Positions 2,021 through 62,188 of a DNA stretch of 64,000 nucleotides are shown here, piece after piece (position 1 is the stretch's first letter; every line of letters begins with the position of its first letter). The DNA lies in the IMG/VR virus record IMGVR_UViG_3300028045_000001, positions 62,001 through 126,000 of that record. One strand, given 5' to 3'. The notes under the pieces are model-generated. The model made no database searches and was not told the DNA's origin. It saw only the letters and a program-made list of their open reading frames with translations. A program made the position numbers and the translations under genes.

Positions 2021-2133
2021 TTACATGAACCCAAAGGATAGAGGGTAGCACTCTTAATTTTTATGTAGTAATTACATTATATATGTATTGAGGTAATATT
2101 TAGTATTTTAAACGGCACGCATTGGAGAACAAA

Positions 2134-20696: not shown

Positions 20697-22787
20697 TTAT
20701 TCTGGCGTAAAGCCTTCACGACTACAGTTGATATCAACATTCCAAACTCGGTTGGTTGCAGGTGCTTGGATATCGACTGCAACATGCGTCTCATACCCAC
20801 GTTTCTGTTCTTCAGCAGTTTGATACACCCTCACACTGAATACATATTTTCCATTGTAGGTAGTCGCAAGCTTGTTGGTGAGGTCATCTGTAATCTGCTG
20901 CTGCAAAATATCAAATGGTATGTCCATTCCAGAGAAAAGCGTCCAGCTTTTTCCAATAAGTTGTTTTGTATACGTGAGCGTATCCACAAAATACAGGCTA
21001 CTTAAGACTGAAGTTTCATGACGATACCCAGTTCGAAGGGCTGCGTAGAAGAGGCCAACTCTATCGAAGTAACTTAAATAGTTACCACCTGCCGCCCAGA
21101 GGCGTCCCTTAGAGTCTTCGCTGGATGGCGTGTAGTTAACCGATTCAAATAGGTTACACTCGCTATTAGGTCTTCCCCCAAACGATCCCTGTAAAATCTC
21201 TGTCCCCATGTACTCAGATCGCATCTGGGCAATCCTCAGCGAGCAGGGCACCAGTTCATTTGAGGGCAGCGTTCCAACCTGCATCCCAATACTGAACCTA
21301 CAAGCTCCTGTGCCCTTATCTATTGATTCTGGAAACAACAAACCGTATGCCCGTAAAGAGATAGCAACACTCTCATCCTGATACTCGTTATTGATGGGAG
21401 GTCGTAAACCATTGGTTGGGTTGGCCGACCCAGACTCGTATACTGGAGTCTCTCCATCCTTATAGTGCACGGATAGGTCTTGAGTAGCGACCGTCACTAT
21501 CAAATCGTCCCGAAGCGTCATAGCCTCAAGCAATGCTTTCTTCGTATCCAAGGAACACCCCATGTCATACACGTGGGTCATAGGGTATCGAAGTTTATCC
21601 ACGATAGTTGGGGCAAGCGTACCACTGCAAAATTTAATAAGCTCACCTTCGATTGTGACATCATCTAATACACCGTCGGTCCCATTTGTAGCATAGATAT
21701 TGTTTGCCGAATTAAAATTTAATCCAGCCTCTACATTAAGTCCAGATAGTTCTGTTTCAGATGTGACTACCCACAATCCCGGATACGGATCATTTTTAAA
21801 GTCCTTGCCGGTAAAGATATCCACCATCATTCCATTGTCCGTAATGACGATGCCCTCATCATCATAACTTCCGGATTGAACATCAGTGAGCCATGCTTGA
21901 CCAATGGCGTTGATGTTTTCATGATAGATTGCAAATGAAGCTGGGAGGTCGGAGTATCTGGTTGGAAAGTGATCTCCGAAATACATCTTAGCAGTCGTAA
22001 CTGGATCCTTCGCGTCTGGTAAGAATGAAAATTGATTAGACACATTTCCATTCTCGTCAAGAACGTTAGCAACAGAAACGTTCCCATACAGCTTTTTCTT
22101 CGGGGCCATTGTATAAATCTGACTTCCGATATTTTGTATCATCAGAGCGTCGAGATTTGCAAAATCGCGGTATAGTGAAAAACATCTGTCGCTACCGAGT
22201 GCGCCTGGATATGCATCCAATTCAACCATGATAGGATAGGTGATCTCGTCCCCATTTGTAGAAGGGGAAATGTTCCCTATCCCATTTTCCAACTCAGTGT
22301 CCAGTAATGCTCTTGTTCTCCACACAATGGACATACCTGTCTGAGTTACAATGGCGGGTGGAGTCGCGGTGTCCATTTCGGGTACTGGCTTTCCAAGAAC
22401 AGTGTTGACTATGCCGTCGGAGTCGCGCGACCATGTAGGGCAATCTGTATCTTTTGTAACAACGGCTTCAAGTACCACATTTGCAGACGTAGCAGTATCG
22501 TCAGCCAAGCGAATAATCCAAACCCCATGCCTTTCAAACATGGTCTTAGCCAGCTTCGCCTGTAGAGAATAATATAATTTATTATCCTCATTGAATGTTT
22601 CGCTTCCATATACAGTCTTAGCGAATTTGAAATCTGGGCACCAAACCAGTTCGCCCACTGGACCACTCTGGGCCTTCATTGGACAAATCAATTTATGCAA
22701 GGGCAGACTCTCGTCTTCGATTGGTCGATAAATACTGTTATCAACTACGTTGATTTTCCAATGCGGGTGAGGTTGTATGCTAGCCAT
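20697..22787 (-). CDS. Tail sheath protein (phiKZ gp29-like)
   Basis: ~696 aa; LPLHKLICPMKAQSGP, YGSETFN, LRYPMTHVYDMG, FPES...GTGACR patterns; AAGGAG RBS before ATG 22787 (ORF track 22985). Confidence 0.8.
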   Translation of the reverse strand: MASIQPHPHWKINVVDNSIYRPIEDESLPLHKLICPMKAQSGPVGELVWCPDFKFAKTVYGSETFNEDNKLYYSLQAKLAKTMFERHGVWIIRLADDTATSANVVLEAVVTKDTDCPTWSRDSDGIVNTVLGKPVPEMDTATPPAIVTQTGMSIVWRTRALLDTELENGIGNISPSTNGDEITYPIMVELDAYPGALGSDRCFSLYRDFANLDALMIQNIGSQIYTMAPKKKLYGNVSVANVLDENGNVSNQFSFLPDAKDPVTTAKMYFGDHFPTRYSDLPASFAIYHENINAIGQAWLTDVQSGSYDDEGIVITDNGMMVDIFTGKDFKNDPYPGLWVVTSETELSGLNVEAGLNFNSANNIYATNGTDGVLDDVTIEGELIKFCSGTLAPTIVDKLRYPMTHVYDMGCSLDTKKALLEAMTLRDDLIVTVATQDLSVHYKDGETPVYESGSANPTNGLRPPINNEYQDESVAISLRAYGLLFPESIDKGTGACRFSIGMQVGTLPSNELVPCSLRIAQMRSEYMGTEILQGSFGGRPNSECNLFESVNYTPSSEDSKGRLWAAGGNYLSYFDRVGLFYAALRTGYRHETSVLSSLYFVDTLTYTKQLIGKSWTLFSGMDIPFDILQQQITDDLTNKLATTYNGKYVFSVRVYQTAEEQKRGYETHVAVDIQAPATNRVWNVDINCSREGFTPE

Positions 22788-28071: not shown

Positions 28072-28103
28072 CTGCCCATGCTAACAATTGTTAGCATGGG
28101 CAG
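28072..28103. terminator. Perfect 32-bp loopless palindrome (centre CAATTG)
   Basis: CTGCCCATGCTAACAA|TTGTTAGCATGGGCAG; no U-tract. Confidence 0.8.
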
Positions 28104-28122: not shown

Positions 28123-29421
28123 ATGGAAATAAAAGCCATAACAATAAAAACAGGACACGAGGTACATTCCCAGTGTAAGAATACCCATACCTATAAAGAA
28201 CTACTTAACTCCATAGATATTGATGTAGAGATAGCAGTACATTTTATCGATGTATATGGGAATATATACAATGTGGATATAAATAAACTACATCTGAACT
28301 TACCCGAGTTGGGTGACACTTGGGAAGAGTTTGAATATAATGTAACATTACAATTGGCTATGACTGGATATATGTCAGATCTTAGAGTGGAGAATGTCAT
28401 CAGTACCATCGGAGAGGATGGTCGCACTGACTATGTTTATTCGGAGGAAGATATGTATCAGGAAGATCGTATAAGGATAGTGCCCACTGAAGCGCTACAA
28501 AGTATCGACATCAAGCGAGGTAGTATACAAATCCCAGACGATATAGACAATTCATTATTGAACCTTAAAAATAATGATCTAAGAATTAAAATATCCGATT
28601 CCGATGCTGGAATAATAAATTTAGAGAATAGTATCTGTGTAATAAATGGAAAGGCGTTCTATCCATTAATGTTTGAGGGAGACATGTGGGTGACTCAGTG
28701 TGTTGATACATTGTCCCAGACTTCGGGTGATGCCTTTTTTATAGATTTCACAAACGTAGGTGGACACACCTTATATAAATTCTCAGAACTTAATTATGAA
28801 TTATTGAATAATGTCCTCCTCGATGATCAAAAATGCAGTGGGACGGTCTCTCTAAGTTTACCGACCGATGTCACTATGTACAATAAAACTCCATTGTTAG
28901 TTATAGAAGGTAGGATATTTTTCCCGAATGAGTTTAACTACACTAACAGTAGGGTAACGTTCGATCTAACTAAATTTCCAATAGAGGCAATGCTTGTGTC
29001 CGACTATGGAAAAGATATAAAGACTACTAAGTCATCTGGTACAGACACAGAGATAGCCCTTAAGGATGTAATAGAAAAAAAATGGGCGGATGTCAACTAT
29101 ACTGGATCATTTTTAATACTGGTTAATTCAGAATTATTAATCCATCAAAGAACATTGTATAATACGTTTATAGAGTCGGCTGTATTCGATCAAGCGTTCA
29201 CAAATCAATCCTTACTTGTAAAACAAAGTACAAGAGAGTTCGTGAATTACGTGCAGGATGAGACAGAGTATAGGTACTTATTATCATTTAAACCATCCAA
29301 GGACCAAATGCTACTATCAAGGGACATGTCTACCTTGGCGACATATGGTAAATCGGATCCACGAATGGGATTAAATCTAAAACATGGGTACTACACAGTA
29401 CTTAATATAAAAAAGAGGTAG
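28123..29421 (+). CDS. Putative virion protein (432 aa)
   Basis: Long ORF upstream of the gp176/gp175-like pair; function by context only. Confidence 0.55.
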   Translation: MEIKAITIKTGHEVHSQCKNTHTYKELLNSIDIDVEIAVHFIDVYGNIYNVDINKLHLNLPELGDTWEEFEYNVTLQLAMTGYMSDLRVENVISTIGEDGRTDYVYSEEDMYQEDRIRIVPTEALQSIDIKRGSIQIPDDIDNSLLNLKNNDLRIKISDSDAGIINLENSICVINGKAFYPLMFEGDMWVTQCVDTLSQTSGDAFFIDFTNVGGHTLYKFSELNYELLNNVLLDDQKCSGTVSLSLPTDVTMYNKTPLLVIEGRIFFPNEFNYTNSRVTFDLTKFPIEAMLVSDYGKDIKTTKSSGTDTEIALKDVIEKKWADVNYTGSFLILVNSELLIHQRTLYNTFIESAVFDQAFTNQSLLVKQSTREFVNYVQDETEYRYLLSFKPSKDQMLLSRDMSTLATYGKSDPRMGLNLKHGYYTVLNIKKR

Positions 29422-29424
29422 CGT

Positions 29425-30108
29425 ATGAAATTCCAACCCGATCACTTCTTTAAAAGATCGAAAGGACAGGTTATATTCACCGGTAAGATAATGACGATCG
29501 ATATCCCAGACAGGTATGGAAAATTAGGTTGGCTGAACTGGGGCGAACAAATGGAAGTCATAGGTATATTCACTATGGTTATCAATGAGGATATATCTGT
29601 TGGATATAATTGTCAGGCACTGATAACGACCATGCCTTCATCCACGGAAAGAATAAACATCGACGGCTCCGCGTATGTCAGGCTAATATACAACAAGAAT
29701 GATGTCTTCTTGGTATCTGAAGATATTATAAAACAAAATAGTATACCGTACAACATACTCAATGAATTTATTTTCTTGGGTAACCTCCCAGCGTGGATGA
29801 ACTATAAAAATTCATATGAACTATTTGAAAACACCTCTGCATTAACTGGGGTAAATTTTTCAGCAGACAGGGTTTACTTTCATGTAATGCTGTCCCACTG
29901 TTGGAGGGATAGGGACAATGTGATGAAGATGTATAGGAATACGGGAATGCATGCTCCTGGTATCTTTATACCGATGAGGTCAACGCCGTATTCCGCACTA
30001 ACTACTATGGCTCGCACAATAGGTTCTTTTGATAGTGATGGGATCACATCCGCTATCGTAAGCCCTACCGAAGAGGTTTCTGACTTAGAAAACATTATGA
30101 GGGATTAA
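29425..30108 (+). CDS. Virion RNAP beta' C-terminal subunit (phiKZ gp176 / SPN3US gp244-like)
   Basis: DRVYFHVMLSHCWRD and TTMARTIGSFDSDGITSAIVSPTEEVSDLENIMR resemble the RpoC C-terminal KHIEVIVRQM and SFISAASFQ..VLTEAA....LKENVI segments; adjacent to prohead protease as in phiKZ/SPN3US. Confidence 0.6.
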   Translation: MKFQPDHFFKRSKGQVIFTGKIMTIDIPDRYGKLGWLNWGEQMEVIGIFTMVINEDISVGYNCQALITTMPSSTERINIDGSAYVRLIYNKNDVFLVSEDIIKQNSIPYNILNEFIFLGNLPAWMNYKNSYELFENTSALTGVNFSADRVYFHVMLSHCWRDRDNVMKMYRNTGMHAPGIFIPMRSTPYSALTTMARTIGSFDSDGITSAIVSPTEEVSDLENIMRD

Positions 30109-30112
30109 TAAA

Positions 30113-30979
30113 ATGAAATCAAAACAATTAGCTAAGCGAGTATTTCAGGCTATAGGTATAGCCAGGGAACTCAATGGGTATGTACTATCCGCGTCAAGGC
30201 CAGATGAGAAAGGGTATTTCAGATCACCGGTCATACAACTTGATACAGAGTGGCGAGGTGGAGTACCGGGGCAGTATGATACGGATTCGTTGTTGGATGC
30301 CATAGAAAATCCAATAAAGTCGTTTAACATCGCACTTCGAAGTGGGAATTGTTACGGAGAATACTACCATCCTATATACTCAGGTCAGCCACTTGGAGCA
30401 TGGGTGAAACGATGCATGACCATAGATGGATCATGTGAAAGTCATTTCATATCACACATTGAACCTGGCCCCGACATTAATGATAAGCCGGTCCTTGTTA
30501 TGGTGCATAAACCATCCGGACCATATGCAGAGCAATTGGACGGATCACTAAGGGACCCGGATAAAAATACTTCCTATTCCATTAGGTGTCTTGTCAATAA
30601 GCGCAGAACCCAATCTGGCAAGCTACACGTAGACGTCGTTAAGACATTTGACCACTGCGACTGTCCGGGGTTTGAAGTTGCCGGTACAAGATATCAGCCA
30701 CACATACATCGAGTAGCATCGAACAACATGGGGCCAATCGATGGTCATGATTTGGATGTTAGTATGGTAATGGCGGATCTTATGCGCGATCATGAATCCG
30801 ACAGGGTCAGACTACATAGTGACATTATAAATGATTTGAAACTAATCTTGGATGACGATGCAATGCGAATGCCGGATATGGTACAATTCATTGATAAGGT
30901 GAATAAAAAAGCAGTGTTCACAGACGGCACTGAAAAATCTGCATTCGAGTGCTTCTTTATCGGAGGTGGTCATGACTAA
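30113..30979 (+). CDS. Prohead (head maturation) serine protease, phiKZ gp175 / T4 gp21 family
   Basis: GEYYHP (His), YSIRC (Ser), TFDHCDCPG (Asp) in family order. Confidence 0.8.
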   Translation: MKSKQLAKRVFQAIGIARELNGYVLSASRPDEKGYFRSPVIQLDTEWRGGVPGQYDTDSLLDAIENPIKSFNIALRSGNCYGEYYHPIYSGQPLGAWVKRCMTIDGSCESHFISHIEPGPDINDKPVLVMVHKPSGPYAEQLDGSLRDPDKNTSYSIRCLVNKRRTQSGKLHVDVVKTFDHCDCPGFEVAGTRYQPHIHRVASNNMGPIDGHDLDVSMVMADLMRDHESDRVRLHSDIINDLKLILDDDAMRMPDMVQFIDKVNKKAVFTDGTEKSAFECFFIGGGHD

Positions 30980-31766
30980 TATCATTAAACGATTGTTGGA
31001 TCCAACTCCCGCTTGCAATTTTACTCCTGTGAGTCTAAAGGCAGATTGGAAATTGCCAAAGACACCCAGGACTACTCGTCCCGACAGTGCAGTAGATATG
31101 AAAGGTTTATCTCTAAATGATGCGCAGGGCGGTGAAAGTGACGGTATAGTTACCATTGATACGTTTCTTGAAGGCGGAGCCAAAGATGCCGCTACAGAAT
31201 GCAATGGTGAATCCACTGTAACGGATCTCCCTTTCTCATTAAAATTAGAGAAAGTATTGGATGGGTCGTTGCATCTAACGGTGATCATAATGGGATACAT
31301 TGATCAGCCATTCTCATGGATACAATTAGAGAAGGTACTGATGCGATTATCGGAGTCAGATAGTGTTACTATGTACATTATCTCTGGCGGTGGCAGCATT
31401 GCGGGTGGCATGTGCGTAGTGTCTGCTATGAAAAAATGTAAGGCGAGGATAACGACTGTTGGCATGGGAGTAATTGGATCAATGGGGTCTGCTATTTGGA
31501 TGTACGGGGATGAGTTGATCGCTATGCCGATGTGTGAGATAATGTACCATATGTCTGCTGGAATGTCATTTGGAAACTCCCTTGCTGCGAAAGAGGACGC
31601 CGAAAACATTGTGGATTATATTAACAGCATTTTTTTACGGAAGGCTGTGGAGTTAAATATCATTACTCCAGAAGAAGCTGAAATGATAAATAAGAATAAA
31701 CAGGATGTTTACATAACAGCTGAGGAGTACAATGCTCGACAGGGGGGAAGTAGAGATGATCAATAA
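30972..31766 (+). CDS. clpP: ClpP-like serine protease with intact triad and ~90-aa N-terminal extension
   Basis: MYIISGGGS (INSPGG), IGSMGS (Ser), IMYH (His), QDVYITAEE (Asp); GGAGGTGG RBS, ATG 30972 overlaps protease stop. Confidence 0.8.
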   Translation: MTNIIKRLLDPTPACNFTPVSLKADWKLPKTPRTTRPDSAVDMKGLSLNDAQGGESDGIVTIDTFLEGGAKDAATECNGESTVTDLPFSLKLEKVLDGSLHLTVIIMGYIDQPFSWIQLEKVLMRLSESDSVTMYIISGGGSIAGGMCVVSAMKKCKARITTVGMGVIGSMGSAIWMYGDELIAMPMCEIMYHMSAGMSFGNSLAAKEDAENIVDYINSIFLRKAVELNIITPEEAEMINKNKQDVYITAEEYNARQGGSRDDQ

Positions 31767-32445
31767 AGGCGCTGCAAGCGTAGGGATGATCGACAGTATT
31801 GTCTCTATGAACGATATGGAGGATATAGAACATATCTCTAAGATAGTCGTAGGGGAGGCTCCTGTCAAGGAGAGTAAAGGGGATGACGAGGATAGCCCTG
31901 GTAAATGCTTCGACGTCGTCTATGATGCACATGGACAAAGGACAATTGTTTCTTACATCGAGGATTTATGTGAATGGGACACCACAACATTTACATTACT
32001 ATCTATTTTGTTATCTGAACCTGAAGATACGACTATAGTCATAAATGCGGGTAGTATGTATGCCCAGCCACATACACTTATTGCTACCATGAATGCAATA
32101 GCTAATTCAAACGCAAAGGTTATAGTTGATATCAGATGGGGAAACGCAGCTACGTATTTATTAGCTGCTGTTGCGGATGAGGTTACTGTCAATGAGACAT
32201 CGTGCGTGGTGTTCAATCAGTTTAGAGCCTATGGGTCTGGTACAGTAGAACAGGCCAGACAGAGGACAACGGTAGCATCAAAAAGAATCAGTGCGCTCTA
32301 CGAAATATTAAGATCAACTGGGCTATTGACAGATGACGAAATTAATAAACTATCCACTGAACATACTACTTCTATTTGGTTATATGGCGATGAGCTAATG
32401 GAACGAATAGCAAAGAAGAACTCGATGTCAGTTAGCAAAGTATAA
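31756..32445 (+). CDS. ClpP-fold protein lacking catalytic triad (ClpR-like)
   Basis: Collinear with upstream ClpP: GNAATYLL (Ser->Asn), VVFNQ (His->Asn), TSIWLYGDE (Asp->Ser); ATG 31756 overlaps the end of clpP (ORF track 31732). Confidence 0.65.
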   Translation: MINKGAASVGMIDSIVSMNDMEDIEHISKIVVGEAPVKESKGDDEDSPGKCFDVVYDAHGQRTIVSYIEDLCEWDTTTFTLLSILLSEPEDTTIVINAGSMYAQPHTLIATMNAIANSNAKVIVDIRWGNAATYLLAAVADEVTVNETSCVVFNQFRAYGSGTVEQARQRTTVASKRISALYEILRSTGLLTDDEINKLSTEHTTSIWLYGDELMERIAKKNSMSVSKV

Positions 32446-32462
32446 CATTTTCGATAACCCAC

Positions 32463-32496
32463 CACATCGCGTGTTTTAATAGAAACACGCGATGTG
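32463..32496. terminator. 14-bp stem hairpin ending the protease cluster
   Basis: CACATCGCGTGTTT-taatag-AAACACGCGATGTG. Confidence 0.7.
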
Positions 32497-32519: not shown

Positions 32520-33782
32520 ATGCACAATATATTTGTTCAATTTAATGAGTCCAACAAAAAACTTACAGATATGGATATATTGGAATCAACTATGAAGTTC
32601 TTTGAAGAGTTTGAAGAAGTAGATGAGTTATTCCGAGAGCTCGATTCTGAGTTGAACAGGTGCAGTAATGCACAACTTATTTGTGCTACAGTGAGCGAGT
32701 TCGGGCTTACTCCCGCCGTAGCCAAAGTTACAAGTGACCATGACTTAACAATGGCACTTGGTGAGCAAACCGCGTCATTGCAGCAATTTATAGATGGAAC
32801 TTCTGAAAAGGCCATTGAAGTAGAAGTCGTAATGAATGAAATGAAAAAATTCATTCAGGACAGTATGAATACTCTAGTAAAGATAGTGCTCACAGTAGTT
32901 AAAAAACTCATAGAGCTTAGTGGGAAAGTAGTGACCTACATAATCCGTGCGCTTAATCACAATAAAGACGAGGTTCGTGAATTACGGGAAACCATGGATG
33001 AGACCATCAAAGAAGTTACGGAGGTGTCAACCAAAGATATCAGTTCAAGAAACCCAATGTATACAGATGAATATGTCATGAATGTAGAATTATGGCATGC
33101 TGGGAAACATCCAAAGCAAGCGGAAATCGAATTGACTCCTACTACTAACTATGCTGCGTTTGTTAAAATTCGTGAGACACTGGCGAATAAGGCAAGCATG
33201 CTGCAGGATACTGACGCTTTGATCCAAGACTTCGTCGGTAATTTAGATACGGAATACTACAATACGTTCCAAGAAATTTTAAAGGGATTGCATTTCGATT
33301 TCTATTGGGATAAGAAGAACCTAAGTCTAAATAGATTATCATTAGATAAATCTAAAATTGGAAAGAAGGGCGGCGCTAAGGGAATAGACAATAAGACGAA
33401 GAAGCCTCATTTCGAGGCTAAGTTAAATGAGCTGCTAACTGGGCAATTAGATAATCAAATGGCACCAGTACTCGTTATGATTAATGCACAAAATGGATTG
33501 ATCAAAGATACGAAGAAGTATCTTACCGAATTAATTAAATCATTTGATGGAACTAATATACAGCCCAATGATAAACATTATCAAGTGGCCTCACAATTGG
33601 AAGAACGATATGGCTCTACTGGTAGAAGCGATGACGGTAAGGGTGGGATCCATGAGCTGAGTAAGGCGGTTCTCGCATACAGAAGATCTATAATGGAACG
33701 ATGCCTGTATGTAAGTAATACGCATACAAAAATGATTAGCATTATATGCAAAACTATGGCTTCGACCATACCAAAAAAATAA
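32520..33782 (+). CDS. Putative internal head (ejection/inner body) protein, paralog 1
   Basis: Acidic N-terminal propeptide-like region, SLQQFID...EVVMN motif, then amphipathic helix, as in phiKZ internal head paralogs. Confidence 0.6.
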   Translation: MHNIFVQFNESNKKLTDMDILESTMKFFEEFEEVDELFRELDSELNRCSNAQLICATVSEFGLTPAVAKVTSDHDLTMALGEQTASLQQFIDGTSEKAIEVEVVMNEMKKFIQDSMNTLVKIVLTVVKKLIELSGKVVTYIIRALNHNKDEVRELRETMDETIKEVTEVSTKDISSRNPMYTDEYVMNVELWHAGKHPKQAEIELTPTTNYAAFVKIRETLANKASMLQDTDALIQDFVGNLDTEYYNTFQEILKGLHFDFYWDKKNLSLNRLSLDKSKIGKKGGAKGIDNKTKKPHFEAKLNELLTGQLDNQMAPVLVMINAQNGLIKDTKKYLTELIKSFDGTNIQPNDKHYQVASQLEERYGSTGRSDDGKGGIHELSKAVLAYRRSIMERCLYVSNTHTKMISIICKTMASTIPKK

Positions 33783-33841: not shown

Positions 33842-35962
33842 ATGGATACTGTGTTGTTATATTTCAAAGATTACTTGGCTAAGTGTGCGGTTATTTATGA
33901 TGCAGAGACGCCCAATAAATCCTTTATTAAACTGAGTACCATTTATAAAAAAAAGGGGATAGAGAACAATAAATGGATGTTAGCTCTGTGCCAAAAAGAT
34001 CTAATAGGGGTTGATCCACATAGTAGTGAATTATCGTATGATCAGAAATTAAAAATAGGACTCGAGTGCAAGATAAACCCCATATATTTTTTTAGAGAAG
34101 TTTGTCGTGTGCCAGTGACGGGATCTAACCCAGTTCCTTTTTTGGCGGACCAAGCTAACCTACCTGTACTGTGGCTGTTTCTTAGTAGTATAAACTTGTT
34201 CGAAGTCATAGCAAGACAAATTGGTAAGACTGTATGTATGTTAGCAATATATGAGTATATAACGTATATAGGCTACTACAACTCCTCATCGAGTATGGTA
34301 ACACAGACAGACAAACTCCGCGTTGAAAATATCTCTAGGCTAAAGGTAATGCGCGATGCCCTTCCTAAATGGATGCTGCATAAATCCATAAGGGACAGTG
34401 ATAACAAAGAGGAGCTGTACTACGAAGCGTTGGGCAATAAGCTACTCACCTTTGTTGGGTCGGCGGATCGAAATGCAGCGGATGGTAAGGTACGTGGCCT
34501 TACTGTACCAACTCTAGGCTGGGACGAGTTCCCGTACATCAAAAATAATGAGGTCATGTATAAAGCTGCCACTGCCACCATGTCTACTGCAATTGAACAA
34601 GCGCGGGAAGCTGGAGTGCCCTCAGCCAATATGATATTCACAACGGCAGGGGATCTCACCACAAGGGATGGTAAGTTTGCTTACTCGCTTGTACTTGGCG
34701 CGATGTCATGGCAGGATATACTATTTGATAGCATTGATATGAGTAGCCTAAAGAAAACTGTCAATGCAAACAGCGTTAATGATATGGTTTATATCACCAA
34801 ATCCTATCTGCAATTGGGGAAGACTAAGGAGTGGTTAGAAGAGCGTAGAAGAAAGAACTCGTTGTCTGAAGCAGAGTTAGATAAAGATTTTAGATGCATT
34901 TGGTCAACGGGGAACAGGGAAACTTCAGTGGTTGATCCTACGATACTCAAACTATTAAACGAGTATCAAAGGGATCCCGAGTATATACAACAATATGACA
35001 ATACTCATATATGTTGGTTTAAAAGTAAGGCTGACATTGATAGGATTGCTCCAACAATATCGTGTGTTATGGGGGCTGACGGCAGTGAGGCCATAGGAGC
35101 TGATTTCACGACATTCGTTATAACTGACTCCTCTGATCTTTCTGTGCTCGGCACATGTAAATGCAATATATCCAACTTGTTACAATTATCAGAGATGATA
35201 TTTGAACTGCTGATGAAATTTAAACGCATGATCTTCGTGCCAGAACGCAATAGCACAGGGGCGGCCATAGTAGACAACATATTGATATTCTTTTCACGTG
35301 CGAATGTCAATCCATATAAACGAATATTTAATACATTTGTTGATACAGGGGATAATTTAGCAGTTAGTAAAATAAACCAACTTATAAGTCCACTTGGCTC
35401 AGATAAAAAACGATTTGGATTTAGGACTACGGGAAGATCAAGAGATCTACTATACAATACTGTATTACACGACAGTATATCCGAATGTAAAACCAAACTA
35501 TATGATCAAAGACTTATAGAAGAGATACAAGGGTTGGAGAAAAGGAATGGTAGGATTGATCACTCTGAGGCCGGACACGATGATTTACTTGTGGCTTGGC
35601 TACTGTGTCTGTGGTTCATAAAGTACGCCAGGAATACACATCTTTACGATATAGATAGTTCTAAATTTATGGTCAACCATATAGATCCACACGCCAAGTA
35701 TACCAAGCAAGAAATAGAGCAACAAATGCAGCTTAGAGTACGCCGAGAAGGATTGGTGGAACTTATAAAAATATCATTCTCCAATTCTATGGGCGAGGTA
35801 TATAAACGAGAACTGAGGCTCATTGAATCGGCTATCAATGAAGATATTAAAGTTCCCGTTAAAACCGCCAGTGACGTTGAAGAATCTGTCCGCAAAAAAA
35901 GAGATAATAGAAAGAGGGATTTGCCAGCAACGTTACGACGCTTTTACCCACCGGCAGTATAA
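33842..35962 (+). CDS. terL: Terminase large subunit (phiKZ gp25-like)
   Basis: Walker A ARQIGKT, Walker B LGWDEF, coupling motif TTAG, nuclease MGADGSE and RIDH...GHDDLLVAWL. Confidence 0.92.
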   Translation: MDTVLLYFKDYLAKCAVIYDAETPNKSFIKLSTIYKKKGIENNKWMLALCQKDLIGVDPHSSELSYDQKLKIGLECKINPIYFFREVCRVPVTGSNPVPFLADQANLPVLWLFLSSINLFEVIARQIGKTVCMLAIYEYITYIGYYNSSSSMVTQTDKLRVENISRLKVMRDALPKWMLHKSIRDSDNKEELYYEALGNKLLTFVGSADRNAADGKVRGLTVPTLGWDEFPYIKNNEVMYKAATATMSTAIEQAREAGVPSANMIFTTAGDLTTRDGKFAYSLVLGAMSWQDILFDSIDMSSLKKTVNANSVNDMVYITKSYLQLGKTKEWLEERRRKNSLSEAELDKDFRCIWSTGNRETSVVDPTILKLLNEYQRDPEYIQQYDNTHICWFKSKADIDRIAPTISCVMGADGSEAIGADFTTFVITDSSDLSVLGTCKCNISNLLQLSEMIFELLMKFKRMIFVPERNSTGAAIVDNILIFFSRANVNPYKRIFNTFVDTGDNLAVSKINQLISPLGSDKKRFGFRTTGRSRDLLYNTVLHDSISECKTKLYDQRLIEEIQGLEKRNGRIDHSEAGHDDLLVAWLLCLWFIKYARNTHLYDIDSSKFMVNHIDPHAKYTKQEIEQQMQLRVRREGLVELIKISFSNSMGEVYKRELRLIESAINEDIKVPVKTASDVEESVRKKRDNRKRDLPATLRRFYPPAV

Positions 35963-37293: not shown

Positions 37294-38508
37294 TTACCTT
37301 AAAGAATCTAATTCCTTTTTAACGTATTTTTCTGTAGCTATCGATATAGTGGAAATATCTCCTATAAAGCTATACGCCATCTTAGTTATTTCATGTAATA
37401 ATTTTGACCCACATGTTATGGCGGCGGCAGAGTGTTTCTGAACTTTTCGGTACTCAGTTGGGTCCCCTTTTGTTTCAGTTAGGAGTTTGCTGTATTCGTT
37501 TAGTTCTTTCGTTATTAACTGACCCGCCTTGGTTATAGCAACACCCCCACCCTCGACTGCAGTATCAATAGTAAATAAATAATCTGTGTCTAAGAATAGC
37601 TGGAAAATAAAGTATGCTTTCGTTAAATTATCAACGGTGCCGAATCGAAATTCGCCGGCAGTCATGGTTACCACTTCATATTTCATTTCTGGAGAAATAG
37701 CAACGTTGATGCCAAGCAGTCTAAATGCTTCAAATAGCTCAGTTGAGAGTGCTTCAGAATAATCTGGATCAGAATCATACCCTTTTCTTAAACTTTTTAT
37801 TTTTGTTTCCCAGGGAGTTATTAGTGACCCAAGTTGAGCGTACTTAAGTTTTTTAATTATTTTAATCTTTTCAACTATATCCTGAACTTTAGTTTTTATA
37901 ACAACTCTTTCTTTGAGTAGGTTGTTCTTGCTTTTTTTTGTGAACCACTCATGTGTAGCATCAATGACTTCTTTTTTGTTTGGGACTCTTTCTCCTCCGA
38001 GTGTACGTATAGCCAATTGGCGCAGTAGGTGATCTAATGTTGTCTCTTTCTTTTTTAGATCGGATTTAGATATCTTAGAAAATAGCTTAAATTTTCTAAG
38101 CAGCTTAATAAACATCTGGCGTAGTAGGGCTAAGAGTTTAACGAACTTATCATATCCAGTTTTAATAAGCTTAGTGATGCTATTCATCATGACTTCTTGC
38201 ACGATATCGACATCGTCAATATCATCCATATATCCTTGTAGAGATACATCCGATTCGATGAACAGCTCGTTGTAGTTCCGCTTTATGGCCAACTGAGCCA
38301 TCCCTTTATTTAGCCCATTCTCCGAGATTACTTCTGCAAATTGAGATACAGTCCCTATGTCATTAATGAGGGTGTCCATTTCAAAAACTACAGTATCTAT
38401 CTCATTGAATATCTCATTGATATCAATCCTTGCAGCAATAATATCAGAAGAAGTAGCCTCCTCAGTTCCCATTTCAAATAAAACTTCAATTTTATTTTTA
38501 TTTTTCAT
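37294..38508 (-). CDS. Putative internal head protein, paralog 2
   Basis: SLQGYMDD...QEVMMN motif; N-terminal similarity to 32520..33782 and 38540..39871. Confidence 0.6.
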   Translation of the reverse strand: MKNKNKIEVLFEMGTEEATSSDIIAARIDINEIFNEIDTVVFEMDTLINDIGTVSQFAEVISENGLNKGMAQLAIKRNYNELFIESDVSLQGYMDDIDDVDIVQEVMMNSITKLIKTGYDKFVKLLALLRQMFIKLLRKFKLFSKISKSDLKKKETTLDHLLRQLAIRTLGGERVPNKKEVIDATHEWFTKKSKNNLLKERVVIKTKVQDIVEKIKIIKKLKYAQLGSLITPWETKIKSLRKGYDSDPDYSEALSTELFEAFRLLGINVAISPEMKYEVVTMTAGEFRFGTVDNLTKAYFIFQLFLDTDYLFTIDTAVEGGGVAITKAGQLITKELNEYSKLLTETKGDPTEYRKVQKHSAAAITCGSKLLHEITKMAYSFIGDISTISIATEKYVKKELDSLR

Positions 38509-38539: not shown

Positions 38540-39871
38540 TTACTCATGTTCTTTTTTAAGTTGCGTTAATAGTAATCCCAATTGATAGTTTACAGCGTTC
38601 CCGATTTTAATGAGTTCGGTCGTGTGTGCTGCCGTTGTTTTTAAAAGCTCCATGAGTATTTTGGAAGCTACCCCAACATTGATGCGTGACCTTTTTACCA
38701 CATAAGGAGTAGCAGTGCCGTTCTGCATATCCTCGGATTTAAACCTTTCGGCTTTCAATCTCAGAACCGTTTGATCCCACCAACGTAAAAAGAATTTATC
38801 TATAGATCTCAGTTCATCAGTGGATAATTTCTTCCAACTAAGGTATGCCTTTTTTGCCAACTCATCTGCAGTAGCTAACATCCGAGCTGGAGTGTGGCGG
38901 TAAATTTTACCATCGTTCATATATGCTATCGGCATATGATATTGTCTATATATGGTCAATAATTCATACAGGTCAGTAACTTTGTGTTTTACGCTGACGG
39001 GTTTTTTAGAAACTTTAAGTCCGTTGGAATTTAGTGGCCCTACTGCCACACCAAGTTTACTCAGATCCTCTATGACATCACTGGAGGATAGAAGTGTTGT
39101 ATAAAATGGAGTTGGAATAGGGATGGTGTTCTTTTTAAATGCATCCATCTCTTGTACAGATGCATCATGAAAGCTATTGATGGCATTGTAATCTATTGTA
39201 TTGAGTATCTCAATTGATTTAAACAACGAGGTAGGGGAATCACTAAGGTGTATGTTGGGCATTGTAACATTATGATCGCTGATTACTTCGAACACCCGAG
39301 AGTCGTCCACCCATTCGACTGTGCCGTCGCGCTTGAGCCTATCGGGTCCCTCATACATATCTATTATACCCCGAATGCGTTCAATAACGTCTTCGATCGA
39401 AATGTTATTTTTTTTTACTTTCACATCGGACTTAAACAAGAATGAAAAAACTTTTTTAGCTATCTTAATAAATAAGTCCCTAATATGATGCATGGCTTTG
39501 ACAATATTATCGTACCCCTTTTTAATGGTATCCGCAAGCCCATTCATCATAACTTCTTGAACAATAACTGAATCACACTGGTCGTCTATATATCCTTGAA
39601 GCGATGTATGCGAGTGCTTAAAAAAAGTATCGAGGTTATATTTAATTCCAAGGGTAGCCATCCCCTTGTCCAGTCCAGTTTCTTCAAGTGTAGTTTTAAA
39701 AATATCCATAGATTCTAACCTTCTATTATCGGAATCCATTTCATCTATGCTAACTGCAATTGTATCAAATAAATTATTTAGTTCGATCACGTCGTCAAGA
39801 TAATCTATCTCATTGTGGATAGGGATATTGCGTGATGGGTCAACATCCATATTTGCAAATAGGTCCTTCAT
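38540..39871 (-). CDS. Putative internal head protein, paralog 3
   Basis: SLQGYIDD...QEVMMN motif; AAGGAGAG RBS before ATG 39871 (ORF track 39937). Confidence 0.6.
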   Translation of the reverse strand: MKDLFANMDVDPSRNIPIHNEIDYLDDVIELNNLFDTIAVSIDEMDSDNRRLESMDIFKTTLEETGLDKGMATLGIKYNLDTFFKHSHTSLQGYIDDQCDSVIVQEVMMNGLADTIKKGYDNIVKAMHHIRDLFIKIAKKVFSFLFKSDVKVKKNNISIEDVIERIRGIIDMYEGPDRLKRDGTVEWVDDSRVFEVISDHNVTMPNIHLSDSPTSLFKSIEILNTIDYNAINSFHDASVQEMDAFKKNTIPIPTPFYTTLLSSSDVIEDLSKLGVAVGPLNSNGLKVSKKPVSVKHKVTDLYELLTIYRQYHMPIAYMNDGKIYRHTPARMLATADELAKKAYLSWKKLSTDELRSIDKFFLRWWDQTVLRLKAERFKSEDMQNGTATPYVVKRSRINVGVASKILMELLKTTAAHTTELIKIGNAVNYQLGLLLTQLKKEHE

Positions 39872-39890
39872 GTTGCTCTCCTTTGTATGA

Positions 39891-40730
39891 CTACACGATG
39901 TAATAAAGTAATCTGTTGAACTCCCTTTTATCGGCAATGATACTGGACCTTGAGAATTTTCTTAATTTTTCATTATATTCTGCTTCTTGATTTTCCCAGC
40001 TCCTGACTTTTTCAGCAAATGCCCCTATCTCAAATCCTCCTTCAATTCTTCCTTTATCCAATGACAATATTAGCTTATTATAAATATGCGCCTTTACTGC
40101 ACATACAGCTAAATCAACAAAAGATTGATACGCTGCCTCGCCAAGATTGTTTAAGTCCTTGTCATAATTAATCTTGAACGTTAGTACATAATTTAAGTGA
40201 GACTGAGTGGCTGGTATCAATTGGATTATGTTGGTACCAACTACTTCGGCTATTTGTGAGACACTTTCAGTTGCACCGGAGATCATTTCTATAACTCTTC
40301 CTCCAGCACCTGCCATTGTGTTAGTACCTCCAAGTCTAGAAAGCGAAAGGATTCCCGTCGCGTCACCAGTGGCGTTATCGAACACGGATGGGTAATTAAT
40401 AGATGTGACCGATGTTATATCGCCACCCTCTAATAGTTCTTTCGGTATTCTATAGATAGAGTATCGTCCTGAGGACCTTCGTTTATCGTTGTCATTTAAC
40501 TCTGGCATCACCGCCATTTCTTCCCTTAACATTATATCCTTGGTTCGAGCGCCCCTTAGATTTATATCTGGTAGTACCCAGGTGCCAAGGACTTGTTCCC
40601 TTATTACATTGTCTACATTGATCCTATTATCTCTCTTAGGATTAAATACCACATCAAGTATCTCTTTTGGCACAGTATTTGATAATCTCACAAAAAAAGT
40701 CTCTATTGGGTTGAATGAGCCACCAGGCAT
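39891..40730 (-). CDS. phiKZ-like conserved virion protein (~279 aa)
   Basis: NPI......VPKEIL..VF.....VDNVIREQVL..WVLPDINL.G pattern; GGAGG RBS before ATG 40730 (ORF track 40922). Confidence 0.6.
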   Translation of the reverse strand: MPGGSFNPIETFFVRLSNTVPKEILDVVFNPKRDNRINVDNVIREQVLGTWVLPDINLRGARTKDIMLREEMAVMPELNDNDKRRSSGRYSIYRIPKELLEGGDITSVTSINYPSVFDNATGDATGILSLSRLGGTNTMAGAGGRVIEMISGATESVSQIAEVVGTNIIQLIPATQSHLNYVLTFKINYDKDLNNLGEAAYQSFVDLAVCAVKAHIYNKLILSLDKGRIEGGFEIGAFAEKVRSWENQEAEYNEKLRKFSRSSIIADKREFNRLLYYIV

Positions 40731-54544: not shown

Positions 54545-55444
54545 ATGATTGATTTGATGGAATATAAACATTTGTTATCGAATAAAGAAACTCATGATAT
54601 AGGGCAATCTATACGGGAGCTGGATGCGTTAATAATCATGTTGGATGATCAAGTTAGCCTGCAAGCTTTTTCTGCAATTGGACTTATCAAAGTAGTCTTT
54701 GATAAGTTCTCCGCATTGCTGCGTAACATGGCGTACACTATCACTAGGGCAACAAAGGACTTAACACAAAGTGAATTTATGTTGTTCTTTAATGGTAATA
54801 ATAGTAAAGTAAAAAGAGTCTTGGCATTGCCTTATGAGGTCGTTAAAGGTGTAACTATTGATACGCCAGCAGGACTAACTACGACATACGAAAAAGTAAC
54901 CAGTGATGTTGTCGTGACGTATAACGTGCTATCTATGTTGGAAACATCTACCAACGCACTTAGACTTTTTAATGCTGTGTTAACAGATACAACAGATAGT
55001 GCAGTGGAACGTAATTTGACGCAGGTAGTAAAAAAATCAATCAGCAACAGAATAAAGAATTCCGCCAAGCTCGTAAAAACAAACTTCGCCAAAGGAACTA
55101 CTGTACGAGCACCCTTCAATAGAGTTTTCGAATACGAAGATTCCCTTGGTAACACTGTCACTAATTTACGTTCGTTGGAAAACAGGCTACTGAACGTATC
55201 ATCTATACATAAAAACATGAAGGAGAGTGAAAGTATATGTGATACTCTAATCTCAAATCTGACTAGCGGCGACGGCGACGTGGTTGAATTATCGAACGGT
55301 TCATTGAAGACACTCAGTGAGTACGTTCGCAATATCGCAGGTATCTTTGAAAACTATGCTCTGACGCTCACGGTACACCAAGTGATAGAGCACAATATGC
55401 AATATGTTATCAAAGAGCTTGGGGCTAGTCACAAGATTTTTTAA
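54545..55444 (+). CDS. Putative internal head protein (299 aa)
   Basis: AGGAG RBS; short acidic N-terminus ending in VSLQAF; V..P.GL...Y pattern as in phiKZ-like head proteins. Confidence 0.5.
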   Translation: MIDLMEYKHLLSNKETHDIGQSIRELDALIIMLDDQVSLQAFSAIGLIKVVFDKFSALLRNMAYTITRATKDLTQSEFMLFFNGNNSKVKRVLALPYEVVKGVTIDTPAGLTTTYEKVTSDVVVTYNVLSMLETSTNALRLFNAVLTDTTDSAVERNLTQVVKKSISNRIKNSAKLVKTNFAKGTTVRAPFNRVFEYEDSLGNTVTNLRSLENRLLNVSSIHKNMKESESICDTLISNLTSGDGDVVELSNGSLKTLSEYVRNIAGIFENYALTLTVHQVIEHNMQYVIKELGASHKIF

Positions 55445-61474: not shown

Positions 61475-62188
61475 ATGAACAAAAAGAAAGTAGCTATTGT
61501 CGCAGGGACAGAAAAGTATGGGGCACATACTATCGGCAATGCCATAAGGGAAGCACTGTCGTTTAAATACGATGTGATAACGGTTGGCCGCTATGGTGGG
61601 GATATTGAGGTAGAAATATCAAGGGGAAATTATTTGAAATTACTGGATGCCATCGTCGATAAGTTAGATGGCAGGCATGTGGCGCTGTTAGTTAACTCAA
61701 TGGCTACAAACGAAGATGACTTATTAATCGAGGAGAATCTATTCCCCTATACAATACTGTACGATGTGCTGACAGACAATGGATTGTTCGGGAACAATAT
61801 AGTGGGCTTCCAGGAGTCCACTGAACCTAAGGCACACAGTGTGATTAACATTGGGGGCCTTAGTGCATATATGGTGGGTAGAGGGAAAAGGAACCACACC
61901 ATACTAAAGGCAGCTATTGATGGGTTTACCAAAAGTATAGCTGCACAGGGGGTGCGATGTAACACTATATCTCCGGATCGCGTTATGGCTCATTACGAAA
62001 TAACGGAGGGATCGGAAAAAGAGTTCGTGGAGAACTATCCAAAAGCGAGTGCCTGGAATCCTTTGGGCAAAGTACTTATGGCAAAGGACGTTGCAGAAGT
62101 GGTCGTCATGGTGGACAATTGCGCAGCTATCAATGGGCAAAATATATTGGTAGATTATGGACACTCTATCGTGCAGAAAGAATTTTAA
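61475..62188 (+). CDS. Short-chain dehydrogenase/reductase-fold protein 1 (catalytic Tyr replaced)
   Basis: KVAIVAG...IG, LLVNS, VINIG, HTILKAAIDGFTKSIAAQGVRCNTISP, DVAEVV...INGQNILVDYG. Confidence 0.8.
   Translation: MNKKKVAIVAGTEKYGAHTIGNAIREALSFKYDVITVGRYGGDIEVEISRGNYLKLLDAIVDKLDGRHVALLVNSMATNEDDLLIEENLFPYTILYDVLTDNGLFGNNIVGFQESTEPKAHSVINIGGLSAYMVGRGKRNHTILKAAIDGFTKSIAAQGVRCNTISPDRVMAHYEITEGSEKEFVENYPKASAWNPLGKVLMAKDVAEVVVMVDNCAAINGQNILVDYGHSIVQKEF

What the first reader, a model, noticed from the sequence alone, without database searches (positions are those of the whole stretch)
30113..32445. Translationally coupled three-gene protease cassette: prohead protease + active ClpP + catalytically dead ClpR-like subunit
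Seen: gp175-type protease (His/Ser/Asp intact) overlaps the start of a ClpP with complete triad (GSMG/MYH/QDVY) and a ~90-aa N-terminal extension. That gene overlaps a collinear ClpP-fold paralog with all three catalytic residues replaced (S->N, H->N, D->S). One hairpin closes the cassette. Known: ClpP/ClpR hetero-oligomers occur in cyanobacteria, plastids and Plasmodium; some siphoviruses use ClpP-like head proteases instead of, not alongside, a gp21/gp175-type enzyme. No ClpX/ClpA ATPase is in the window. Inference: a phage-encoded ClpPR complex, either a second head-maturation protease (fitting the altered SLQ motifs) or a device to hijack or poison host Clp ATPases. This is the best candidate for an undescribed system here.
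Basis: partly seen in the sequence, partly recalled or inferred. Interest (0 to 1): 0.82.

Follow-up and report, generated by a model that had tools for sequence, protein, structure and literature searches.

The report
Jumbo-phage protease trio with dead ClpP
A marine giant phage carries, right after its normal head-maturation protease, a ClpP-like protease and a permanently inactivated ClpP-like partner; this three-gene unit is conserved across a whole uncultured branch of phiKZ-like phages and is fused into one protein in one of them, so the pair almost certainly works as one particle whose job is still unknown.

Summary
Window 30113-32445 holds three overlapping + strand genes. The first is a Peptidase_S80 prohead protease with H86/S156/D180 intact. 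The second is a ClpP-fold peptidase ("P1", ATG 30972) with Ser170, His193, Asp245 and a disordered N-terminal extension of about 90 aa. The third is a ClpP-fold paralog ("P2") that has lost Ser, His, Asp and the oxyanion GG. A perfect 15-bp hairpin follows.

The unit is not a one-off. S80-P1-P2 with spacing of 12 nt or less recurs in about 10 divergent uncultured jumbo-phage lineages. These form one 100/100-supported branch of the S80 tree. P1 always keeps Ser and His, and P2 never does. In one lineage P1 and P2 are a single 491-aa ORF. No GenBank phage has P2, and six cultured phiKZ-like phages have no ClpP-like gene beside S80.

Both proteins belong to the phage-type ClpP-like family, not to cellular ClpP or ClpR.

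Best reading: an obligate hetero-oligomer of active and dead subunits, made with the prohead protease, probably an auxiliary head-maturation peptidase. Hijack of a host Clp ATPase is less supported. This is a new variant of known kinds, and its function is inferred.

The parts
28072..28103 (.). Perfect 14-bp palindromic hairpin upstream. It is the likely 5' boundary of the transcription unit that ends with the cassette.
   Evidence: listed on the - strand, no proper T tract. It is the same style of hairpin as the one at 32463-32496.
28123..29421 (+). 432-aa protein of unknown function. It is the first gene of the unit and is syntenic in relatives.
   Evidence: Searches give no family hit. Orthologous 433-aa and 429-aa genes sit at the same place in L004 and L007.
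29425..30108 (+). Virion structural protein (phrog_2926). It always precedes the S80 protease, also in cultured phiKZ-like phages.
   Evidence: 6.6e-45. The same neighbour is seen in sm033 and Noxifer.
30113..30979 (+). Prohead protease of the Peptidase_S80 (phiKZ gp175 / SPN3US gp245) family, with H86, S156 and D180 intact.
30972..31766 (+). P1: a phage-type ClpP-fold serine peptidase. It has Ser170, His193, Asp245 and the oxyanion GG, plus a ~90-aa poorly conserved N-terminal extension. Its start overlaps the S80 stop by 8 nt.
31732..32445 (+). P2: a ClpP-fold pseudo-peptidase. Ser, His, Asp and the oxyanion loop are all replaced, and about the first 50 residues of the model (numbered from the alternative ATG at 31756) are disordered. 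It overlaps the end of P1.
32463..32496 (+). 15-bp perfect hairpin that closes the unit. There is no U tract.
   Evidence: -27.6 kcal/mol, z -6.84.
32520..33782 (+). 420-aa coiled-coil-like protein, one of four paralogs with an invariant S-L-Q. It lies between the cassette and terminase only in this phage, because relatives go straight from P2 to TerL.
33842..35962 (+). Terminase large subunit. It is the conserved downstream neighbour of the cassette in relatives.
   Evidence: phrog_2, 1.1e-38. Long ORFs of 702-720 aa, of the same size as the window's 706-aa TerL, follow P2 in L004, L007, L117 and L120. These were not themselves scanned against the families.

Best explanation
What it is. The three genes are a conserved morphogenesis-operon module of an uncultured branch of phiKZ-like (S80-protease) jumbo phages.

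The two ClpP-fold proteins. P1 is a phage-type ClpP-fold serine peptidase whose conserved chemistry is a Ser-His dyad plus the oxyanion loop. P2 is an ancient paralog-like ClpP-fold protein that kept the fold, including the long 'handle' helix, but lost every catalytic element.

How they are made and assembled. Both are translated in fixed proportion from overlapping or abutting reading frames. I infer that they assemble into one hetero-oligomeric, self-compartmentalised particle. The simplest 1:1 geometry is an active P1 ring stacked on a dead P2 ring.

Proposed job. The module is made together with the S80 prohead protease and a virion protein, so I propose that the particle acts in head maturation as a second, non-specific peptidase. 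It would clear the large propeptides and core fragments that the site-specific S80 enzyme releases, or process a subset of head proteins.

Shown: the fold, the active/dead status, the conservation, the linkage and the fusion.
Inferred: co-assembly, stoichiometry, location in or at the prohead, and substrates.
For: Fold and status:
- P1 hits Pfam CLP_protease and PDB ClpP chains.
- The AlphaFold model of P2 has pLDDT ~90 over residues 50-226. Its best Foldseek matches, at probability 1.0, are ClpP chains in PDB (TM 0.57-0.67) and mostly phage Clp proteases in BFVD (TM up to 0.80).
- P2 family against phage-type ClpP profile: 99.5%, E 2e-22. P1 family against the same profile: 99.0%, E 3e-18.
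- Language-model neighbours of P2 are viral Clp-protease clusters.

Active versus dead:
- All 11 P1 sequences keep GG, Ser and His. All 10 P2 sequences lack all three.

Conservation and linkage:
- S80-P1-P2 with spacing of 12 nt or less occurs in the window, L004, L005/L007/L115, L116, L117/118, L119, L121 and L130. L006 holds P1 and P2. L003 holds S80 and P1, with the next gene cut by the contig end.
- 10 of the 11 sequences on one 100/100 branch of the S80 tree carry the pair. None of the 7 on the other branch do.
- P1 diverges in step with S80 (mean identity 29% against 31%). P2 diverges faster (18%) but is never lost.

Physical association:
- L120 encodes P1 and P2 as one 491-aa ORF with two ClpP-like domains.

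Morphogenetic context:
- The genes lie in one hairpin-bounded unit with a virion protein and the S80 protease.
- A 702-720-aa ORF of the window TerL's size follows directly in four relatives.
- The best NCBIfam hit of 7 of 8 P1 sequences is 'head maturation protease, ClpP-related'.
- [S/G/N]-L-Q, the candidate processing motif of this phage's capsid and paralogous head-like proteins, also occurs in the N-terminal extensions or linker of P2 in L117, L119, L120 and L130.
Against: - There is no direct evidence of assembly, activity, timing or virion association. No member is cultured.
- The nearest cultured-phage homologs are single genes in early or nucleotide-metabolism regions, not head modules. 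These are the T5 early 'putative Clp protease', nt-1, CR9, SSBI34 and AD45-P1. Two of the metagenomic homologs sit next to PhoH or a 5'-3' exonuclease.
- Gene order in phiKZ-like genomes is a weak guide to function.
- The window's own P1 and P2 contain no SLQ.
- The NCBIfam head-maturation hit is far below its cut-off, 51 against 120 bits.
- The P2 model was built with an alignment that included ClpP homologs. The single-sequence model was poor, pLDDT 47.
- In the tree, P1 groups weakly (89/90) with cellular ClpP rather than with P2, so a tandem-duplication origin is not shown.
Confidence: 0.45

Rival explanations
1. Host Clp-ATPase hijack or poison. The P1/P2 particle docks to the host's ClpX, ClpA or ClpC. 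It would either redirect ATP-dependent degradation to host or defence proteins, or titrate the ATPases with a half-dead core. This would be a phage ClpP/ClpR analog in the functional sense.
For: - P1 has real similarity to cellular ClpP: 30-33% identity to Listeria and Enterococcus ClpP in the core, hhalign 98%, and a weak grouping with cellular ClpP in the tree.
- Iyer et al. 2021 (PMC7824862) read patchy ClpP genes of phiKZ-like and other jumbo phages as host-directed.
- Some giant phages encode whole Clp sets (PMC6102473).
Against: - P1 matches only positions 40-168 of the 182-position Pfam model. The profile alignment to cellular ClpP covers 114 columns starting at the first core strand.
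- The N-terminal pore-loop and helix-A segment used for ATPase communication (established ClpP knowledge) is replaced by a non-conserved extension followed by a beta-hairpin, as in P2.
- All cellular ClpP equivalog models are missed by about 200-330 bits.
- P2 has no detectable similarity to cellular ClpP or ClpR.
- No Clp ATPase or adaptor was found in the window.
- Strict linkage to the prohead protease is not expected for a host-takeover factor.
Confidence: 0.15
2. ATPase-independent cytoplasmic peptidase. P1/P2 would have the same unknown, non-structural role as the single ClpP-like early genes of T5, Vequintavirinae, N4-like and T4-like Vibrio phages, for example peptide or amino-acid recycling or removal of particular host proteins. 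Its position beside S80 would be historical, not functional.
For: - The closest cultured homologs lie in early or nucleotide-metabolism regions and are not head proteases of those phages. Metagenomic homologs lie next to PhoH, RNA ligase or a 5'-3' exonuclease.
- phrog_1827 is filed under 'other', not 'head and packaging'.
Against: - None of those homologs has a dead partner.
- In the S80 branch the pair has stayed glued to S80, with a TerL-sized ORF after it in four relatives, through divergence down to ~25% identity. This is so although phiKZ-like genomes are otherwise rearranged.
- One homolog of the same family (L008) does sit in a terminase, 481-aa, ClpP-like, 285-aa head-type module.
Confidence: 0.22
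3. P2 is a decaying duplicate, or a scaffold-like protein that does not bind P1. The 'pair' would then be only an active protease followed by a remnant.
For: P2 evolves fastest of the three, with mean identity 18%, and has lost every catalytic element.
Against: - Intact ORFs of 206-294 aa are retained in every lineage that has P1.
- The predicted ClpP core and handle helix are preserved, and the P2 family forms a 99/99 clade.
- The structural Gly (G162) is shared with all ClpP-like sequences.
- P2 is fused in frame to P1 in L120.
Confidence: 0.05

Closest known systems
ClpP/ClpR and ClpP1/ClpP2 hetero-oligomeric Clp cores (cyanobacteria, plastids, Plasmodium; Mycobacterium, Listeria, Chlamydia, Streptomyces)
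   Same: - An active ClpP-fold subunit is paired with a second paralogous subunit. In ClpR that subunit lacks the catalytic residues.
- The genes are often adjacent.
- Stacked-ring 7+7 cores are known for ClpP1P2 (PMC3280978, PMC6889138 abstracts). That geometry would fit the 1:1 dosage and the fusion seen here.
   Different: - There is no orthology. P2 has no profile similarity to cellular ClpP or ClpR, and P1 fails the cellular equivalog models.
- Both proteins lack the conserved ClpP N-terminus and carry variable disordered extensions.
- No cognate AAA+ partner is known.
- They are encoded by a virus next to its prohead protease.
Phage-type ClpP-like proteins (phrog_1827/5410; NCBIfam NF045542 'head maturation protease, ClpP-related'; T5 early 'putative Clp protease')
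   Same: This is the closest sequence family for both P1 and P2. The core is the same and the chemistry is Ser-His.
   Different: - Known members are single genes. They are either the sole prohead protease of a small phage (context as in L008) or an uncharacterised early gene.
- None comes with a dead partner, and none sits behind an S80 protease.
- Scores are below the curated cut-off.
phiKZ gp175 / SPN3US gp245 prohead protease (Peptidase S80)
   Same: ORF1 is a member, with conserved His, Ser and Asp and the same upstream structural-gene neighbour. In the model phages this enzyme alone carries out head maturation at [S/A/G]-x-E sites (PMC7411985).
   Different: - The window's enzyme belongs to a separate, uncultured S80 branch that always carries the extra P1/P2 pair.
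- The candidate processing motif in this phage looks like S-L-Q rather than A-x-E. That point is untested.

Membership tests
Peptidase S80 (phiKZ gp175-type prohead protease) - ORF1 | Match to Pfam PF20034 above the gathering score | tested here: met
   69.8 bits against 23.4, E 2.6e-19. phrog_3014 matches at 4.5e-19.
Peptidase S80 (phiKZ gp175-type prohead protease) - ORF1 | Conserved catalytic His and Ser (plus a third acidic residue) | tested here: met
   H86, S156 and D180 are invariant in 18 S80 sequences, including Noxifer and sm033. The catalytic Ser/His principle comes from PMC7411985.
Peptidase S80 (phiKZ gp175-type prohead protease) - ORF1 | Cleaves head proteins at [S/A/G]-x-E and removes its own C-terminal propeptide | not testable with these tools
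   There are no proteomic data. Candidate S-L-Q sites in the MCP and in paralogous proteins suggest a different motif, but which enzyme cuts them is unknown.
[quoted passage not shown] | ClpP domain (Pfam PF00574) above the gathering score | tested here: met
   55.9 bits against 20.2, but only profile positions 40-168 of 182 are matched.
[quoted passage not shown] | Ser-His-Asp triad | tested here: met
   S170, H193 and D245 are present in the window protein. In orthologs the Asp is D, N, A or E, so it is not a constrained family feature.
[quoted passage not shown] | Reaches the curated equivalog or subfamily score (TIGR00493, NF001368 and others) | tested here: not met
   40.6 against 308.6 bits, and 45.8 against 249 bits.
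[quoted passage not shown] | Conserved N-terminal pore loop and helix A, and docking to a Clp AAA+ unfoldase | tested here: inconclusive
   Alignments to ClpP start only at the first core strand. The preceding ~90 residues are not conserved. Docking itself cannot be tested here.
ClpR-type inactive ClpP paralog - ORF3 | ClpP fold | tested here: met
   AlphaFold model with alignment: pLDDT ~90 for residues 50-226. Its best Foldseek matches in PDB are ClpP chains at probability 1.0. hhalign to phage-type ClpP gives 99.5%. Caveat: the alignment used for the model contained ClpP homologs.
ClpR-type inactive ClpP paralog - ORF3 | Catalytic residues replaced | tested here: met
   Ser, His, Asp and the oxyanion GG are absent in the window protein and in all 10 family members.
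ClpR-type inactive ClpP paralog - ORF3 | Common descent with cyanobacterial or plastid ClpR and cellular ClpP | tested here: not met
   There is no profile match to cellular ClpP (0.2%). In the tree it lies among phage-type ClpP-like proteins. It is therefore an analog, not a member.
ClpR-type inactive ClpP paralog - ORF3 | Co-assembles with the active subunit | not testable with these tools
   Only indirect evidence exists: coupled translation, strict co-occurrence and the natural P1-P2 fusion in L120.
ClpP-related head maturation protease (NCBIfam NF045542) - ORF2 | Reaches the curated score | tested here: not met
   It is the best hit, but with 51.3 bits against a cut-off of 120. Orthologs score 43-60 bits.
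ClpP-related head maturation protease (NCBIfam NF045542) - ORF2 | Encoded in the head-assembly module and processes capsid or scaffold proteins | tested here: inconclusive
   The position requirement is met: the gene lies between the S80 protease and terminase. Processing activity cannot be tested here.

The most novel reading that the evidence does not exclude
This branch of jumbo phages may mature its giant capsid with two proteases of unrelated folds. A site-specific S80 endoprotease would work beside a virus-encoded, ATPase-independent, asymmetric Clp-like chamber made of an active P1 ring and a dead P2 ring. The chamber would be targeted to the prohead by cleavable N-terminal extensions and would digest the released propeptides and core. 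The shift of the maturation motif to S-L-Q would be tied to this second enzyme.
Probability: 0.25. Interest if true: 0.75.

Novelty: new variant of a known kind. Interest (0 to 1): 0.6.

Why it matters
Head maturation in phiKZ-like phages is thought to rest on one protease, gp175 in phiKZ and gp245 in SPN3US. How the many large propeptides leave the capsid is not explained.

A whole branch of these phages, so far known only from metagenomes, adds an obligate active/dead ClpP-fold pair to that protease. One lineage fuses the pair, which gives a Rosetta-stone argument for a heteromeric particle.

If the pair works in the prohead, it is a new two-protease maturation scheme. If it works in the cytoplasm, it is the first viral counterpart of the ClpP/ClpR principle, and it gives a handle on the uncharacterised ClpP-like early genes of T5-like, Vequintavirinae and T4-like Vibrio phages.

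P2 is invisible to Pfam and NCBIfam, so it is currently annotated as hypothetical. The profiles built here make it findable.

Tried and rejected
- Megablast of the cassette, and tblastn of ORF3 and of the L117 P2, against GenBank phages gave no match.
- Word-based protein searches found almost nothing. For ORF3 only itself turned up. For ORF2 there was one relative, P0003. For the ORF3-family alignment only known members appeared.
- The exhaustive HMMER search gave the first P2 relatives.
- Single-sequence AlphaFold of ORF3 was uninformative, pLDDT 47.
- A PDB profile search with the 4-sequence P2 alignment gave only chance hits.
- The genome-contig scan with the P1 alignment returned only bacterial clpP genes and no prophage or host clue. 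The metagenome scan added nothing new.
- I tested whether other phage ClpP-like genes have a hidden dead partner. The AD45-P1 neighbour is MazG-like and has no similarity to P2. T5, nt-1 and CR9 have no second ClpP-like gene annotated beside theirs.
- I tried to test the S-L-Q motif in relatives by fetching their capsid and paralog genes. Only the window's own contig came back, or the alignment was too loose to search with. The loci of relatives held no informative substrates.
- Read laying gave no polymorphism usable for a selection test.
- I could not identify which cultured 'group 1' phages Iyer et al. meant by ClpP QDJ96709.1, because no supplement is held.
- Rejected: a recent tandem duplication as the origin of P2, because the two families are not sisters in the tree and each is closer to generic phage-type ClpP than to the other.
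- Rejected: programmed frameshift fusion of ORF1 and ORF2. Relatives have small gaps instead of overlaps.
Full report
**1. What is at 30113-32445**

The window is part of a 239,960-bp IMG/VR contig from seawater. The phage is phiKZ-like. The window holds a multisubunit RNA polymerase beta piece, a phiKZ-type polymerase, a tail sheath, a phrog_3231 major head protein and a terminase.

Three + strand ORFs fill the stated interval.

- ORF1 (30113-30979) is a Peptidase_S80 prohead protease, with Pfam 69.8 bits against 23.4. H86, S156 and D180 are invariant in 18 family members.
- ORF2 is a ClpP-domain protein (Pfam 6.3e-15; PDB ClpP chains to 3e-10). Its likely start is ATG 30972, behind a GGAGG and inside the ORF1 stop (ATGACTAA). 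It matches the 264-aa product on record. It has Ser170, His193 and Asp245. The first ~90 residues are non-conserved.
- ORF3 (31732-32445, or from the alternative ATG at 31756) overlaps the end of ORF2. It has no Pfam, NCBIfam or PDB sequence hit.

A perfect 15-bp hairpin follows at 32463-32496 (-27.6 kcal/mol, z -6.8). A similar hairpin at 28072-28103 brackets a five-gene unit: a 432-aa protein, a phrog_2926 virion protein, S80, ORF2 and ORF3. Two independently assembled seawater runs carry the stretch without a single difference.

**2. ORF3 is a ClpP-fold protein without a catalytic site**

- It matches phrog_1827 at 3.4e-8.
- An exhaustive HMMER search of 1.84 billion representatives found three family members (P0004, P0005, P0010) and then active-looking phage ClpP-like proteins.
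- Profile-profile comparison gives 94.9% (E 4e-8, 160 collinear columns) to the ORF2 family. It gives 99.5% (E 2e-22) to phage-type ClpP-like proteins.
- Language-model neighbours are viral Clp-protease clusters.
- With a 16-sequence alignment, AlphaFold gives pLDDT ~90 for residues 50-226 (numbered from the alternative ATG at 31756). The model has the alternating strand/helix core and a 24-residue 'handle' helix.
- Its best Foldseek matches, at probability 1.0, are ClpP chains in PDB (TM 0.57-0.67) and mostly phage Clp proteases in BFVD (TM up to 0.80).
- Caveat: the alignment used for the model contained ClpP homologs, and the single-sequence model was poor.

In every alignment the positions of the oxyanion GG, the Ser, the His and the Asp are occupied by other residues. 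The exact residue opposite the Ser shifts between A, N and T with the alignment, but no Ser is conserved there.

**3. The trio is a conserved module of an uncultured branch**

The contexts of the ORF3 relatives all show the same order: S80, ClpP, ORF3-like. These are L004 (a 221-kb NCBI MAG contig), L005/L007 (JGI, 107 kb) and L006. L003 is cut after the ClpP gene.

I then searched IMG/VR with an S80 alignment, which gave 21 loci. I scanned their ORFs with profiles built here. A ClpP-like gene ("P1") lies directly behind S80 in 10 loci, representing 8 phages. A second ClpP-like gene ("P2") lies directly behind P1 in L116, L117/118 (254 kb), L119 (265 kb), L121 and L130. Spacing is always 12 nt or less, or an overlap.

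In L120 (149 kb) P1 and P2 are one 491-aa ORF with two ClpP-like domains, at residues 75-254 and 328-481.

All 11 P1 sequences keep GG, Ser and His, while the Asp varies (D, N, A or E). All 10 P2 sequences lack GG, Ser and His. P1 always hits Pfam CLP_protease and P2 never does, which explains why P2 is unannotated.

In an S80 tree a 100/100 split separates two branches. One holds 10 pair-bearing phages plus one without the pair. The other holds Noxifer, sm033 and five contigs, with no ClpP-like gene within 5 kb.

Six cultured phiKZ-like phages have nothing ClpP-like beside S80: Noxifer, sm033, AgentSmith, pVa-21, C-ZP2022 and SPLA10. P2 of either subtype has no tblastn match in 50,697 GenBank phage records.

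Mean pairwise identity is 31% for S80, 29% for P1 and 18% for P2. P1 is therefore as constrained as the prohead protease. P2 is looser but is never lost.

**4. What family the two proteins belong to**

Both are closer to phage-type ClpP-like proteins than to each other or to cellular ClpP. The hhalign scores are 148 (P2 to phage-type), 124 (P1 to phage-type), 93 over only 114 columns (P1 to cellular), 45-59 (P1 to P2), and none for P2 to cellular.

In a maximum-likelihood tree the P2 family is a 99/99 clade among phage-type proteins. The core P1 family is a 99/96 clade that joins cellular ClpP only weakly, at 89/90. A tandem duplication is therefore not shown.

NCBIfam ranks 'head maturation protease, ClpP-related' first for 7 of 8 P1 sequences, but at 43-60 bits against a cut-off of 120. 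The cellular ClpP models are missed by about 200-330 bits.

P1 aligns to ClpP only from the first core strand onward. The segment that in cellular ClpP forms the axial loops and helix A is replaced by a variable extension and a beta-hairpin. P2 is built the same way.

**5. What the relatives do elsewhere**

The same family occurs as a single gene in two kinds of setting. In L008 it lies in a terminase, 481-aa, ClpP-like, 285-aa head-type module. Elsewhere it lies in early or nucleotide-metabolism regions:

- T5, between dnk and the holin gene
- nt-1, between frd and uvsX
- CR9 and SSBI34
- AD45-P1
- metagenomic homologs next to PhoH or a 5'-3' exonuclease

None of these has a dead partner. Iyer et al. 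2021 noted ClpP in some phiKZ-like and other jumbo phages and guessed at a host-directed role (PMC7824862). I found no paper describing a P1/P2 pair or its link to S80.

**6. Mechanism**

Shown:
- two ClpP-fold proteins, one with and one without a catalytic site
- fixed adjacency, and co-inheritance with the prohead protease across a deep branch
- an in-frame fusion in one lineage

Inferred with good support (about 0.7): the two proteins form one hetero-oligomer. A 1:1 dosage and a fusion fit an active ring stacked on a dead ring better than a mixed heptamer.

Inferred with moderate support (about 0.45): the particle serves head maturation. The arguments are the operon with S80 and a virion protein, and the position next to the terminase (a TerL-sized ORF follows P2 in four relatives). 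Two further arguments are the head-protease-like best family hit and the variable disordered N-terminal extensions, which resemble propeptides.

One more hint comes from a motif. The tripeptide S-L-Q is over-represented in this window, 9 observed against 3.9 expected. It is the only invariant tripeptide in four paralogous proteins, at residues 38-112. It occurs twice in the N-terminal region of the capsid protein. [S/G/N]-L-Q also occurs in the P2 extensions or linker of L117, L119, L120 and L130. If S-L-Q is the maturation site, it differs from the [S/A/G]-x-E of phiKZ and SPN3US (PMC7411985). Which of the two proteases cuts it is open. ORF1, ORF2 and ORF3 of the window have no S-L-Q themselves.

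**7. Rivals**

- Host Clp-ATPase hijack (0.15) lacks any positive evidence and is disfavoured by the missing ClpP N-terminus.
- A cytoplasmic, ATPase-independent role like that of the single early genes (0.22) remains a serious rival.
- A decaying remnant (0.05) is contradicted by retention and by the fusion.

**8. Verdict**

This is a new variant of known kinds, confined so far to uncultured marine and other environmental jumbo phages.

Noticed in passing
window 32520-33782 (+), 37294-38508 (-), 38603-39937 (-), 54545-55444 (+); capsid gene 59158-61254 (+): Four paralogous proteins of 15-21% identity share an invariant S-L-Q at residues 38-112, followed by a conserved G-[YF]-[IM]-D-D...IVQEVMMN block. 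The major head protein has S-L-Q at residues 89 and 113. This looks like a prohead-protease processing motif with Gln at P1, unlike the [S/A/G]-x-E of phiKZ and SPN3US.
   Followed up: partly
L120:4217-5692: P1 and P2 are fused in one 491-aa ORF. The ~70-residue linker contains two G-L-Q tripeptides (NGLQ, RGLQ), which could be cleavage sites that separate the domains after translation.
   Followed up: partly
L119:5853-7433: In this 265-kb contig P1 has a short N-terminus but a C-terminal extension of ~330 residues with no family hit.
   Followed up: no
window 28072-28103 and 32463-32496: Perfect 14-15-bp palindromic hairpins without T tracts sit in intergenic gaps of the late-gene block. They may be this phage's terminators or RNA-processing sites for its own RNA polymerase.
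   Followed up: partly
L135 (T5 21075-21674), L134 (nt-1), L136 (CR9), L111 (SSBI34), L112 (AD45-P1): Many cultured virulent phages carry one phage-type ClpP-like gene in early or nucleotide-metabolism regions, and I found no paper describing its function. tblastn with the L117 P1 found more than 1,100 GenBank records. In SSBI34 the gene is fused to an N-terminal phrog_7224 domain.
   Followed up: partly
window 864-1955 (+): A 363-aa protein gives multiple repeated matches to several PHROGs of unknown function (phrog_17273 at 4e-113, phrog_3649, phrog_35701), so it has an internally repetitive domain.
   Followed up: no
window 2122-4563 and 5210-7435 (+); 61475-62188 (+): The phage encodes both subunits of a type II topoisomerase. 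It also encodes a short-chain dehydrogenase / enoyl-ACP-reductase-like protein (adh_short_C2, 2e-11) just after the capsid gene.
   Followed up: no
window 32520-33782 compared with L004 and L007: The 420-aa S-L-Q paralog between P2 and terminase is absent at that position in relatives, where P2 is followed directly by TerL. It is therefore a lineage-specific insertion of a paralog next to the protease cassette.
   Followed up: partly
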